Both the position numbers and the translations under genes were made by a program. DNA of 63,290 nt, the filler included, from Octopus bimaculoides (taxonomy: Eukaryota), in NCBI RefSeq assembly GCF_001194135.2. It is 10 parts of 9 records of this genome, joined end to end, with 100 filler letters (N's around TTAATTAATTAA, not from the genome) between each part and the next. Parts side by side here need not be neighbours in the genome. Positions count along the whole stretch, not along the records: positions 60,302 to 63,290 come from NW_026432063.1; 9 more parts are not named here. One strand, given 5' to 3'. Positions 60,302-63,290 of this stretch are shown piece by piece. Each line of letters begins with the position of its first letter. The first letter of the stretch is position 1. The notes under the pieces are model-generated. The model was given only the letters and a program-made list of their open reading frames with translations, was not told the DNA's origin and ran no database searches.

Positions 60302-63290
60302 AGGATGCAAACAGTATTTGTCTAAAGTTAGGATCCTGTGAAGAATGCTTCAAATACTTTCTCAATAAACCAATTGATCTTCACACAACAACATTGTTTT
60401 TGAAAGTCTTGAGGCAAAGTTTGAAATCTTTCATACTAAAGGAAATGAACAACAAACATCTATCACTAATGATGTATTCCACATTCTTTGATCATATCAA
60501 TGATGTAATTATTGCCATAAGAGACATAAATGACAAAGAAAAAGACTTCTTAACTGAAATATTAAATATATTTAAAGTAATTCTAACACTTACTCCCAGC
60601 CATTCTACAAAAGTTATGCAAACTGTTGGCATTATAGATATTGCTGTTCAAGATCCTGATTCAGAACTTAATTTGAAAATGAAAGAACTAAAAGATCTTT
60701 TACAATCTGTCAGTTCTGAACGTGCACCTAGATCCAGACAGAGCAGAACACATTCTTCAGCTACTATTGTGGATGATTTTAGGAATCTTAAACTGATTCC
60801 CACAGTAGGAGAGATTGTTTCAAATAAGAAACCTGTTCTCCATAAAAATATAAAACAAGGTGTTTATGAAAATCTTGAGCATTATCTGGATGTGCAGTTT
60901 CGTTTGTTACGAGAGGATTTTGCTGGTCCATTACGTGATGGCTTAGCTTTACTCATCAGCAATGAGAAAATACTAAATGATAAAAAGAATGATGATTTTT
61001 ATATTTATCATAAGGTATATGTTCTAGATTGGGTAGCAACTAAGAATGGTATTCAATATAAAGTATCATTTGATGTTTCTAAATTCTCAAATATCAATTG
61101 GGAACAGAATAAAAGATTTATATATGGGTCACTTCTCTGTTTGTCTGAAGACAATTTCATAACTACTTACTATGCTACTGTTTCTGACAGGAATTCAAAA
61201 GATCTACAGCAAGGAATTATTACAGTGAACTTCTTTCCTGACATTAAATTGAATATGCTGTTAAATAAGCAATTTGTTATGGTTGAATCAAAAGCATTTT
61301 ATGAAGGATATCGACCTATTTTGATGGGTTTAAAGGAAATTCTTTCTCATGATTTACCTTTCAAGGATTATATTTTATATGCTGATAAAAATGTGAAGGC
61401 TCCAAAATATTTGACAGCTTCTAGCCCTGTCTTTGATTTATCTTGTCTCACTGATAAATCCAAACTTGTTTATGATTATTCAACCAAAACTGTTAAAGTT
61501 CAGGGAACATCTTCAACTGCCATTAAGGTTGATGTTCTAGGTAACAACTGGCCAGAAGCAGTGTCACTGAATTTCAATGATTCTCAGTTAAGTGCATTTT
61601 CCAATATTTTATCCAAAGAATTCTCTCTTACACAAGGTCCACCAGGTACAGGAAAGACTTATATTGGCCTTCAGACAGTCAAGGTTCTCTGTAGCAACCA
61701 TGAAAAATGGTGTGGCAAGCCAATGCTGATTGTATGTTACACAAACCATTCTTTGGATCAGTTTCTTGAAGGTATCGATAAGTTTTTAGATGGAGGTATT
61801 GTTCGAGTTGGGGGACGAAGCTCTAGTGAAATTCTTGAAAAATATTCTCTGCACCAAATGAAATTAGAATTTTCATGGCAAAATCATTTTGCTCTGAATA
61901 TAAACAAACAAAATGTTGAAGAGGAAATAAAAGAACTTAAAAGCAATATTGATGGAAAAACTGACCAGTTCCAGGAAACAAAATATAAAATTATTTCTGT
62001 TGATATTCTTGGACAATATATGGGTCACTTTTATGACTTGTTAATAGAAGGTTTTCAAGATAATTTTGGTAAACTGAATGGAAGTAAATATTGTATTATA
62101 GAAGAATGGTTAGGTTTTGGAGATGTCACAGTTAATGAAGAAAATAGTTTCAAAAGCATAGCTAATTGCGATGAAATTATTGATGACCCTGGTGTTGAAT
62201 TTCTTCAAAATAATCGTATGCTTGATACAGATATTGAAGATTTAAGTCAAGCAAGTTGTAAAAGAAATCCTGTCTCTGATGAAACAGAAAAAAGTAATAA
62301 TTTAAACAATAAAGATGGATTTGAAAGAAAAGCAAGAGAAAAAGAAAAATTGCAAAAGAGACTCAAAGTGGAATTAGAATCTAAAGAGGTAATGTCTGTT
62401 GAAGAAATTGATTCAATCAGTTATATTGATTTGTGGATAATGCCTGTTTCCAAACGTTGGTGCCTTTATCGTTATTGGGTGTCTCTCTATTCTTCAAAAT
62501 TATTAGAAGACATTTTTGAATTAACAACAGAGTACAACATGGCTGCAAAGAGATTGGAAGAGCTGAGATATGAAGAAGACAAAATCATCTTTCAGAATTC
62601 TTTAATCATCGGAATGACAACTACAGGTGCTGCTAGATATCGAGCAATTCTTCAAGAAATCCAACCGCGAATTATAATTGTAGAGGAAGCAGCAGAAATT
62701 CTTGAGGCTCATATTATAACAAGCTTAAATCGCAACTGTGAACAGCTTATTCTTANNNNNNNNNNNNNNNNNNNNNNNNNNNNNNNNNNNNNCTATAAAC
62801 TTGCAAAACACTACAATTTGGAAATTTCTCTCTTTGAACGTATGTTTAATAATGACATTGAAGTGAAATGCCTTAACTTTCAACATCGCATGCGGCCTGA
62901 AATTGCAGAACTCGTTCATCCAATTTATCCAAAGTTAAAAAATCACCATTCAGTGAAACTGTATGACAACATCCATGGAATTAGTAAAAATATATATTTT
63001 ATTAATCACAATCAGCCAGAAAATGAAGTGAACTTTGGGACAAGTAAACACAATCCATATGAGGCATCATTTATCACTGGACTGTGTTGCTATTTACGAA
63101 AACAAGGTTATGAAAGCTCACAAATCACTTTACTGACAACATATTCAGGACAGTTGTTTTCTATAAAGAAATTGGTTAAAAAGGAGCCACTATGTGATGG
63201 TGTCAGAGTAACCATTGTTGACAATTATCAAGGAGAAGAAAATGACATAATTTTATTGTCTTTAGTCAGAAGTAATGAGCATAATTCAAT
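60302..63290 (+). CDS. ZNFX1: NFX1-type zinc finger-containing protein 1-like SF1 (UPF1-family) RNA helicase, partial (open at both ends)
   Basis: Manual translation in frame 60304+3n has no stop to the window end (about 995 codons, 13 masked by Ns). It contains the ZNFX1-type DDFR..P..E...P.L..N..G.Y...HYLDVQFRLLREDFAGPLRDG, KRFIYGSLLCLS, Walker A QGPPGTGKT, CYTNHSLDQFLEG, VRVGGRS, GMTTTGAA, Walker B EEAAE, SLFERM, QHRMRPEI and VDNYQGEENDIILLSLVRSN. The zinc fingers would lie beyond the window. Confidence 0.93.

What the first reader, a model, noticed from the sequence alone, without database searches (positions are those of the whole stretch)
60302..63290. Intron-free ZNFX1-type helicase (>=995 codons) missed by the ORF track
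Seen: one reading frame with no stop and no apparent intron, running from the N-terminal helical region through SF1 motif V (YQGEE), with all visible helicase motifs intact. Established: ZNFX1 and its relatives (C. elegans ZNFX-1, S. pombe Hrr1, Neurospora SAD-3) act in dsRNA sensing or small-RNA amplification and inheritance, and human ZNFX1 spreads this helicase region over many small exons. Inference: this is either a retrogene or paralogue from a mollusc ZNFX1 expansion, or a gene that lost its introns in this lineage. A dsRNA sensor is of particular interest in a lineage known for heavy A-to-I editing.
Basis: partly seen in the sequence, partly recalled or inferred. Interest (0 to 1): 0.7.

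Follow-up and report, generated by a model that had tools for sequence, protein, structure and literature searches.

The report
Octopus ZNFX1-like helicase, single coding exon
The piece is a real, intact part of an octopus gene for a ZNFX1-type RNA helicase written in one uninterrupted exon, but this is ordinary: sister octopus species already have it annotated, and snails, sea urchins and amphioxus use the same giant-exon layout.

Summary
Confirmed: the frame starting at 60304 (+) is open for 995 codons, against 47-118 stops in the other five frames. The 37-N gap is in frame and exactly 13 codons long. The Octopus vulgaris orthologue aligns without a single indel across the whole piece, and human ZNFX1 skips exactly 13 residues there. 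The gap hides helicase motif III.

The protein matches human ZNFX1 (PDB 9q9z, E=8e-120) and has an ARM domain, 1B barrel, Walker A, the deviant EEAA Walker B, a 1C insertion with a plug-helix counterpart, and motifs IV and V.

The source is Octopus bimaculoides. An older model there (XP_014781925.1, 206 aa, "uncharacterized") leaves the ORF at 60577. O. sinensis and O. vulgaris annotate the 1226-aa orthologue as an intronless "ZNFX1-like" CDS.

dN/dS against O. vulgaris is 0.38 (0.13-0.18 in the RecA lobes), so this is a functional gene, not a pseudogene.

The giant exon is not octopus-specific. Two Haliotis genes, a sea urchin gene and an amphioxus gene also have it. An ancestral Walker-A intron shared by bird and sea anemone is missing in all of them. 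No retrogene hallmarks were found.

In the orthologues the ORF stops after one finger-like module, with no finger stalk and no RZ finger. Interest is low.

The parts
60304..63288 (+). Open reading frame of 995 codons, cut by both edges of the piece. It corresponds to residues 112-1106 of the 1226-aa O. vulgaris/O. sinensis orthologue.
   Evidence: 0 stops. Ungapped 2987-nt alignment to L001 10332-13318. 92% amino-acid identity to P0001.
60304..60717 (+). N-terminal armadillo-type domain with eight predicted helices (aa 1-138).
   Evidence: AlphaFold model shows helices H2-11 to H121-138 with pLDDT about 85-93. Foldseek hit to 9eve, the ARM domain of human ZNFX1: TM(target) 0.67, rmsd 3.2. Human ZNFX1 has an eight-helix ARM fold.
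60577..60582 (+). GTAATT inside the ORF. The O. bimaculoides model XP_014781925.1 uses it as a splice donor and leaves the frame here.
   Evidence: Window aa 1-91 are identical to aa 110-200 of P0122. The model then ends FICYCD, which is not encoded anywhere in the piece.
60982..61293 (+). ZNFX1 domain (regulatory insertion 1B, a beta-barrel). It includes Y274 (61123-61125), the counterpart of human Y450 that stacks on RNA.
   Evidence: Pfam PF25396, E=4.6e-32, aa 227-330. Beta strands in the model. Y450 mapping.
61636..61659 (+). Helicase motif I / Walker A, GPPGTGKT. It is contiguous here, whereas bird and sea anemone have a phase-1 intron in the last Gly codon.
61732..61767 (+). Helicase motif Ia, VCYTNHSLDQFL.
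   Evidence: Invariant columns C478 T480 N481 H482 L484 D485 F487.
61831..62601 (+). Large regulatory insertion 1C (aa 510-766; human 688-978). It is the fastest-evolving part of the protein.
   Evidence: Mapping to human numbering. dN/dS 0.74 over the overlapping bin aa 521-760. Human description.
62191..62217 (+). Counterpart of the autoinhibitory plug helix (GVEFLQNNR against human 828-836 EADLIQADR). The LQxxR core is kept, but it has one acidic residue against three in human.
   Evidence: Alignment. Predicted isolated helix 629-638 between low-confidence loops 609-628 and 647-674. Function in human.
62680..62697 (+). Helicase motif II / Walker B in the ZNFX1-specific deviant form VEEAAE (EEAA instead of DExx).
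   Evidence: Human EEAA 1006-1009, with catalytic E1007.
62756..62792 (.). Assembly gap of 37 N. It is in frame, has the exact length, and hides motif III (IGDHKQLQPSTNV in O. vulgaris).
62794..62796 (+). Tyr831, the counterpart of human Y1043 that stacks on the 5' RNA base.
62881..62904 (+). Helicase motif IV, QHRMRPEI.
63226..63261 (+). Helicase motif V, YQGEENDIILLS. The piece ends 9 codons later, before motif VI.
   Evidence: Motif VI NRVCVALSRAK is seen in the orthologue P0001.

Best explanation
The piece is the central 81% of the Octopus bimaculoides orthologue of O. sinensis XP_036367004.1 and O. vulgaris CAI9736495.1. That gene is a functional ZNFX1-family (Upf1-like SF1) RNA helicase whose whole coding sequence, about 1226 codons, sits in a single exon.

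Shown: the open frame, continuity across the gap, the domain order (ARM, 1B barrel, RecA1 with a large 1C insertion, RecA2), retention of the ATP- and RNA-contacting residues, purifying selection, and orthology.

Inferred from the human structure: the protein works as an RNA-stimulated 5'-3' translocase. Its RNA groove is closed by a short helix of the 1C insertion until RNA displaces it, and it dimerises through the ARM domain.

Inferred from the orthologues only, because the piece ends before that point: the protein stops about 12-20 codons after one finger-like Cys/His module. It therefore lacks the zinc-finger stalk and the Miz-like/RZ ubiquitin-ligase module of vertebrate ZNFX1. If so, it would bind and remodel RNA without ubiquitylating anything itself.

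A role in antiviral or small-RNA defence is an inference from the family.

The single giant exon is the common layout of invertebrate ZNFX1-like genes, reached by old loss of ancestral introns. It is not an octopus-specific retroposition.
For: - Open frame: 0 stops in 995 codons; P about 8e-37 by composition.
- Gap: exactly 13 codons, and colinear with the O. vulgaris orthologue and with human ZNFX1.
- Family: human ZNFX1 9q9z E=8e-120 and 4e-49. Pfam ZNFX1, AAA_11 and AAA_12. AlphaFold model pLDDT 83, with best Foldseek hits the ZNFX1 helicase core (E=5e-31) and the ZNFX1 ARM domain.
- Functional residues: EEAA, Y274 (human Y450), Y831 (human Y1043) and a plug-helix counterpart are kept.
- Source and orthology: aa 1-91 are identical to O. 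bimaculoides XP_014781925.1. 92% amino-acid and 95% nucleotide identity to the intronless O. vulgaris CDS. The O. sinensis RefSeq model has the same length. A syntenic intronless orthologue exists in Argonauta.
- Selection: dN/dS 0.38, bootstrap 95% interval 0.27-0.55; 0.13-0.18 in the RecA lobes.
- Giant exons elsewhere: Haliotis rubra aa 16-1317, H. asinina aa 40-1369, S. purpuratus aa 121-1040, Branchiostoma aa 66-1003.
- Ancestral intron: same position and phase in bird and sea anemone, absent here.
- C-terminus: no Pfam NF-X1 or RZ finger in P0001 or P0002 at E<=1. No finger or RZ coding DNA within 5-10 kb downstream.
Against: - The piece shows neither the start nor the stop of the gene, and 13 codons, including motif III, are unread. 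Integrity of the O. bimaculoides copy outside the piece rests on P0122 (N-terminus) and on the orthologues.
- No transcript evidence was available. No close transcript-derived protein fragment appeared in the collection.
- The plug counterpart is much less acidic than in human, so autoinhibition may differ.
- In O. vulgaris a GTAAGT lies just before the stop, so a spliced continuation to distant exons cannot be excluded.
- The deep position of the octopod clade in the family tree is unresolved, with bootstrap below 40%.
Confidence: 0.85

Rival explanations
1. It is a lineage-specific processed retrogene: a reverse-transcribed copy of an intron-bearing cephalopod ZNFX1 that became a new gene.
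For: The CDS has no introns. The ancestral Walker-A intron is absent.
Against: - The same giant exon occurs in gastropods, sea urchin and amphioxus.
- Both octopod paralogues are intronless, and the gene is syntenic between Octopus and Argonauta, with the same convergent neighbour about 5 kb downstream.
- No flanking direct repeats or poly(A) remnant at the O. vulgaris locus.
- No other cephalopod family member appeared among the best 120 hits, although ZNFX1 proteins of all other phyla scored high enough to be listed.
Confidence: 0.08
2. It is a processed pseudogene or decaying relic whose frame happens still to be open.
For: An older O. bimaculoides annotation gives only a 206-aa 'uncharacterized' model. 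No transcript evidence was found here.
Against: - dN/dS is 0.38, and none of 300 bootstraps reached 1. Constraint is strongest on the catalytic lobes, 0.13-0.18.
- The frame of more than 1100 codons is kept open in four octopod genes in AT-rich DNA, where about 8% of random codons are stops.
- Family-invariant residues are all retained.
Confidence: 0.02
3. It is the 5' giant exon of a full-length canonical ZNFX1. The zinc-finger stalk, Miz-like domain and RZ finger would lie in distant downstream exons that the annotations of all octopod genomes missed.
For: - GTAAGT sits just before the O. vulgaris stop.
- The Argonauta B paralogue carries at least five finger-like modules after the same point.
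- Annotation splits of this kind occur: the sea urchin model is followed 57 nt later by a model with AAA_12 and an RZ finger.
Against: - No finger or RZ similarity within 10 kb downstream in O. vulgaris or Argonauta A.
- A convergent gene starts about 5 kb downstream in both.
- Argonauta A has no GT at the equivalent site and stops within 20 codons.
- Similarity to the finger-bearing paralogue ends at the same nucleotide in both orthologues.
Confidence: 0.1

Closest known systems
[quoted passage not shown]
   Same: Same order of ARM domain, 1B barrel (Pfam ZNFX1), RecA1 with a long 1C insertion, and RecA2. Same deviant Walker B EEAA. The same RNA-stacking tyrosines (human Y450 and Y1043). A short helix at the plug position. 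About 30% identity over the whole region.
   Different: In the orthologues the octopod protein stops after one finger-like module. It has no rigid six-finger stalk, no Miz-like domain, no coiled coil and no RZ finger, hence no E3 ligase module. The plug is less acidic. The coding sequence is in one exon, whereas a bird gene has 11 introns in the same region.
[quoted passage not shown]
   Same: Direct orthologues with 92% amino-acid identity, colinear without indels, and an intronless CDS.
   Different: A different species. In O. bimaculoides the collection holds only a 206-aa mis-spliced model of this locus.
Invertebrate multi-copy ZNFX1-like genes (Haliotis, Mizuhopecten, Aplysia, sea urchin, amphioxus)
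   Same: One giant exon covers most of the coding sequence. Several copies per genome appear, and three genes are reported in Aplysia (PMC9334734). From my own recollection, Blasi et al. 2022 (Fish Shellfish Immunol 121:456), which could not be read here, describe exactly this layout. The strong induction of mollusc ZNFX1 by dsDNA viruses reported there is quoted in PMC12585102.
   Different: The octopod clade is long-branched, only 30-38% identical to all other members, and has 100% bootstrap support of its own. Some of the other genes keep an RZ finger.
C. elegans ZNFX-1 / S. pombe Hrr1
   Same: The same helicase family with a 1C-type insertion. C. elegans ZNFX-1 also lacks an RZ domain yet acts on RNA in granules.
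   Different: Their role in small-RNA amplification and inheritance was not tested or testable here. They were not among the close hits.
UPF1, Aquarius, Senataxin, IGHMBP2 (Upf1-like SF1 helicases)
   Same: The same two-lobed RecA core with a 1B barrel.
   Different: Far weaker matches (E=1e-4 to 1e-13 against 1e-120). They have no ZNFX1 domain match, no ARM domain of this type and no long 1C insertion.

Membership tests
ZNFX1 family (helicase module) | Upf1-like SF1 core with motifs I, Ia, II, IV and V | tested here: met
   GPPGTGKT, VCYTNHSLDQFL, VEEAAE, QHRMRPEI and YQGEENDIILLS are all present. Pfam AAA_11 and AAA_12 match. 9q9z matches at E=8e-120 and 4e-49.
ZNFX1 family (helicase module) | Motif III (GDHxQL) and motif VI (VALSRAK) | not testable with these tools
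   Motif III lies in the 37-N gap and motif VI lies beyond 63290. Both are intact in the O. vulgaris orthologue.
ZNFX1 family (helicase module) | Deviant Walker B EEAA instead of DExx | tested here: met
   VEEAAE at 62680-62697. The human feature is described.
ZNFX1 family (helicase module) | ZNFX1 domain (1B beta-barrel, Pfam PF25396) | tested here: met
   E=4.6e-32 at aa 227-330, 110.6 bits against a cut-off of 27.
ZNFX1 family (helicase module) | N-terminal eight-helix armadillo-type domain | tested here: met
   Eight confident helices at aa 2-138. Foldseek match to 9eve, the ZNFX1 ARM domain: TM(target) 0.67, rmsd 3.2 A.
ZNFX1 family (helicase module) | Long 1C insertion carrying a conserved, acidic plug helix | tested here: inconclusive
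   The insertion is present (aa 510-766). An isolated predicted helix 629-638 aligns to human 828-836 and keeps LQxxR, but only one of its nine residues is acidic, against three in human.
Full-length ZNFX1 architecture | Stalk of about six NFX1-type zinc fingers after the helicase | tested here: not met
   This lies outside the piece and was tested on the orthologues. P0001 and P0002 end 12-20 codons after one Cys/His module. There is no Pfam NF-X1 hit at E<=1 and no finger coding DNA within 5-10 kb downstream. The Argonauta B paralogue does carry more modules.
Full-length ZNFX1 architecture | C-terminal Miz-like domain and RZ finger (E3 ligase module) | tested here: not met
   No RZ match in P0001-P0003. 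tblastn with the RZ-bearing C-termini of four homologues finds nothing outside the known CDS in L001-L003.
Processed retrogene | Intronless copy plus an intron-bearing parent in the same genome | tested here: inconclusive
   The copy is intronless. No second cephalopod family member appears among the best 120 protein hits, but no cephalopod genome could be searched directly.
Processed retrogene | Poly(A) remnant and target-site duplications | tested here: not met
   None at the O. vulgaris locus. The test is weak, because the gene predates the Octopus-Argonauta split.

The most novel reading that the evidence does not exclude
Octopods keep, under purifying selection since before the Octopus-Argonauta split, a ZNFX1 paralogue cut down to ARM domain, helicase and one finger, with no zinc-finger stalk and no Miz/RZ ubiquitin ligase. 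In Octopus proper it may be the only ZNFX1-family gene left. If so, RNA recognition by ZNFX1 would be uncoupled from ubiquitin signalling in a lineage with massive ADAR editing.
Probability: 0.15. Interest if true: 0.45.

Novelty: new member of a known kind. Interest (0 to 1): 0.2.

Why it matters
Mostly it is an annotation repair. In the O. bimaculoides gene set held by the collection, this locus appears only as a 206-aa 'uncharacterized protein' that leaves the reading frame at 60577. The real product is a ZNFX1-like helicase of about 1226 aa, as annotated in O. sinensis and O. vulgaris.

Biologically it adds one data point to a known pattern: invertebrate ZNFX1-like genes are intron-poor and often duplicated. 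It also adds one modest lead. The octopod copy seems to lack the whole ubiquitin-ligase half that the 2025 human structure shows to be needed for function.

It does not open a long-standing question, and nothing here links it to RNA editing.

Tried and rejected
- A third homologue search, using the finger region of the Argonauta B paralogue, was meant to find a separated finger or E3 gene in Octopus. It returned 'no candidate shares three 5-residue words', although P0003 itself contains that sequence. This is a tool limitation, not evidence of absence.
- Two locus look-ups failed (P0004 Mizuhopecten and P0039 Pomacea), so no bivalve exon map was obtained.
- Blasi et al. 2022, the survey of metazoan ZNFX1 gene structures, is not held. 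What I say of it is from memory, apart from one sentence quoted in PMC12585102.
- Literature searches for ZNFX1 with octopus or cephalopod found nothing relevant.
- Rfam and Tandem Repeats Finder found nothing on the piece. The longest minus-strand ORF is 64 aa.
- The NJ tree could not place the octopod clade, with deep nodes at 5-36% bootstrap. Whether it belongs to a 'mollusc expansion' stays open.
- Rejected: an in-frame retained intron. The piece has no insertion relative to O. vulgaris, and a stop-free intron in 32% G+C DNA is very unlikely.
- Rejected: a pseudogene, on the dN/dS result.
- Rejected: a frame shift across the gap.
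Full report
**Observation.** In the piece 60302-63290, the + frame that starts at 60304 runs for 995 codons without a stop. The other five frames hold 47 to 118 stops. The DNA is 32% G+C, so about 8% of random codons would be stops, and the chance of none in 982 readable codons is about 8e-37. The ORF tool did not list this frame because it omits frames that run off an end of the source. 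Rfam and Tandem Repeats Finder found nothing on either strand, and the longest minus-strand ORF is 64 aa.

**The gap.** The 37 N at 62756-62792, together with the a at 62755 and the c at 62793, make exactly 13 codons. Three independent checks agree that the two sides are continuous and in frame.
- The O. vulgaris orthologue aligns to piece positions 1-2987 without a single gap opening. Identity is 94.2% counting the N as mismatches, and about 95.4% without them.
- O. vulgaris reads ATT...GTC there, which is IGDHKQLQPSTNV.
- The human ZNFX1 chain 9q9z aligns up to residue 1116 on the left and from residue 1130 on the right, again 13 residues.

The price is that helicase motif III (GDHxQL) is unread in this genome.

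**What the protein is.** The part left of the gap matches human ZNFX1 (9q9z) at E=8e-120 and the part right of it at E=4e-49. The next best hits, Aquarius and UPF1, are no better than E=2.8e-13. Pfam finds the ZNFX1 domain (E=4.6e-32, aa 227-330), AAA_11 and AAA_12.

An AlphaFold model of the 817 residues left of the gap, built on 40 homologues, has mean pLDDT 83. It shows eight N-terminal helices, a beta-barrel, and a RecA lobe interrupted by a long helical insertion. Its best structural match is the cryo-EM helicase core of ZNFX1 (E=5e-31). The N-terminal helices match the crystal structure of the human ZNFX1 ARM domain, 9eve, with TM(target) 0.67 and rmsd 3.2 A.

Motifs I, Ia, II, IV and V are intact. 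Motif VI lies beyond the right edge.

**Fine features taken from the human structure.** Naydenova et al. (bioRxiv 10.1101/2025.10.14.682297) describe human ZNFX1 as an autoinhibited 5'-3' SF1 RNA helicase with these features:
- a deviant Walker B, EEAA (residues 1006-1009);
- two RNA-stacking tyrosines, Y450 and Y1043;
- a 1C insertion (688-978) whose acidic plug helix (828-836) blocks the RNA groove until RNA displaces it.

In the window, EEAA is kept (62683-62694). Y450 corresponds to Y274. Y1043 corresponds to the Tyr immediately after the gap (62794-62796). The 1C insertion spans aa 510-766. The plug position reads GVEFLQNNR against human EADLIQADR. The LQxxR core is kept, but only one residue is acidic. 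The model places an isolated helix at 629-638 between two low-confidence loops, as in the human structure. Autoinhibition is therefore plausible but not shown.

**Source and orthologues.** Window residues 1-91 are identical to residues 110-200 of XP_014781925.1, 'uncharacterized protein LOC106877513 [Octopus bimaculoides]', which is 206 aa long. That model uses GTAATT at 60577 as a splice donor and ends with six residues that are not encoded in the piece. In that annotation, therefore, the helicase is missing, and the gene has its start codon 109 codons upstream of the piece.

[quoted passage not shown] Its CDS is one uninterrupted stretch of 3681 bases.

Argonauta hians has two relatives:
- A (P0002, 63% identical) is intronless and syntenic. 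As in O. vulgaris, a gene of about 1725 aa lies convergently about 5 kb downstream.
- B (P0003, 57% identical) has a genomic frame that is contiguous for 1364 codons. Its annotated 57-nt intron is in frame.

**Selection.** Against O. vulgaris, dN=0.036 and dS=0.094, giving dN/dS=0.38. The bootstrap 95% interval is 0.27-0.55, and none of 300 replicates reached 1. dN/dS is 0.13-0.18 in the RecA lobes and 0.74 in the 1C insertion. This is a working gene, not a decaying copy.

**Is the missing intron structure unusual?** I mapped each homologue onto its own genomic locus.

| Gene | Exon layout of the region |
|---|---|
| Haliotis rubra P0005 | 15-aa first exon, then one exon of 1302 codons |
| H. 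asinina P0041 | 40 aa, then 1330 codons |
| S. purpuratus P0032 | 121 aa, then 920 codons |
| Branchiostoma P0012 | aa 66-1003 in one exon |
| Lymnaea P0056 | two large blocks |
| Bird P0017 | first 666 residues in one exon, then at least ten small exons |
| Sea anemone P0033 | 1-481, 480-554, 554-865 and further exons |

Projected onto the window, window residues 1-451 lie in one bird exon, and 11 bird introns fall in the rest.

Bird and sea anemone share an intron at the same nucleotide and phase, inside the last Gly codon of GPPGTG|KT. It is therefore ancestral and has been lost in the octopod, Haliotis, sea urchin and amphioxus genes.

The giant exon is thus derived, but it is old and widespread. 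From memory, Blasi et al. 2022 already reported this layout for sponges, sea urchins and molluscs; I could not read that paper. There are no flanking repeats and no poly(A) remnant at the O. vulgaris locus.

**The C-terminus, outside the piece.** In O. vulgaris and Argonauta A the frame stops 12-20 codons after a single module, CLKPCEARLDCGHTCALLCHP. Similarity to the finger-bearing Argonauta B copy ends at the same nucleotide in both. Pfam finds no NF-X1 or RZ finger. tblastn with the B finger region and with four RZ-bearing C-termini finds nothing within 10 kb downstream. A GTAAGT lies just before the O. vulgaris stop, so distant exons cannot be fully excluded. The most likely product lacks the stalk and the E3 ligase half of vertebrate ZNFX1.

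**Paralogy.** The four octopod sequences form a clade with 100% bootstrap support, but its deeper position is unresolved. Argonauta A is closer to B over most of its length. Over O. vulgaris residues 595-709, however, A is closer to Octopus (61%) than to B (42%). This mosaic suggests an A/B duplication older than the Octopus-Argonauta split, followed by gene conversion in Argonauta. No B-type or canonical ZNFX1 from any Octopus species appeared among the best 120 hits, although ZNFX1 proteins from cnidarians to vertebrates did. This is suggestive only, because no cephalopod genome could be searched directly.

**Verdict.** The thing itself is an ordinary, already named gene of a known family in its usual invertebrate layout. 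The retrogene idea has no support. The link to RNA editing is untested speculation. The only mildly new points are the mis-annotation in O. bimaculoides and the probable loss of the ligase half in the octopod copy.

Noticed in passing
window 60577-60582: The O. bimaculoides model XP_014781925.1 (206 aa, 'uncharacterized protein LOC106877513') treats GTAATT inside the ORF as a splice donor. It therefore misses the whole helicase. Its last six residues (FICYCD) are not encoded anywhere in the piece.
   Followed up: yes
L006 3990-4790 and L007 3435-3965: A bird and a sea anemone ZNFX1 gene share a phase-1 intron in the same Gly codon of the Walker A motif (GPPGTG|KT). It is an ancestral eumetazoan intron that is absent from the octopod, Haliotis, sea urchin and amphioxus genes.
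   Followed up: yes
L002 10001-14100 and L003 10001-13537: The two Argonauta paralogues are mosaics. They are 80-92% identical over most of the gene but only 42-45% identical across O. vulgaris residues 595-825. Over residues 595-709, copy A is closer to Octopus (61%) than to B. This fits an old duplication followed by gene conversion. Only copy B keeps a run of NFX1-like fingers.
   Followed up: partly
L002 9487-9579 and 13945-14037: A 93-nt direct repeat (78% identity) flanks the Argonauta B gene. The downstream copy supplies the last codons of its ORF. It looks like a dispersed repeat, because related pieces occur in L003.
   Followed up: no
L003 12934-13883 and 13884-14833: The 3' end of the Argonauta A gene is repeated head to tail (period 950 bp; the 300 nt compared by the repeat finder are 100% identical, and protein residues 978-1178 match at 99.5%). 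It could be an assembly artefact or a very recent duplication.
   Followed up: no
L001 18779-23681 and L003 18875-23537 (minus strand): A convergent gene of about 1725 aa, with no Pfam hit on record, lies about 5 kb downstream of the helicase gene in both O. vulgaris and Argonauta. The synteny is conserved, but the gene was not identified.
   Followed up: no
L010 5766-5823: In S. purpuratus the ZNFX1-like model (P0032) ends 57 nt before a second model that carries AAA_12 and an RZ finger. This is probably one gene split by the annotation.
   Followed up: no
window 61864-62583: The part of the 1C insertion that was binned (aa 521-760) evolves almost neutrally between O. bimaculoides and O. vulgaris (dN/dS 0.74), while the RecA lobes are at 0.13-0.18.
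   Followed up: partly
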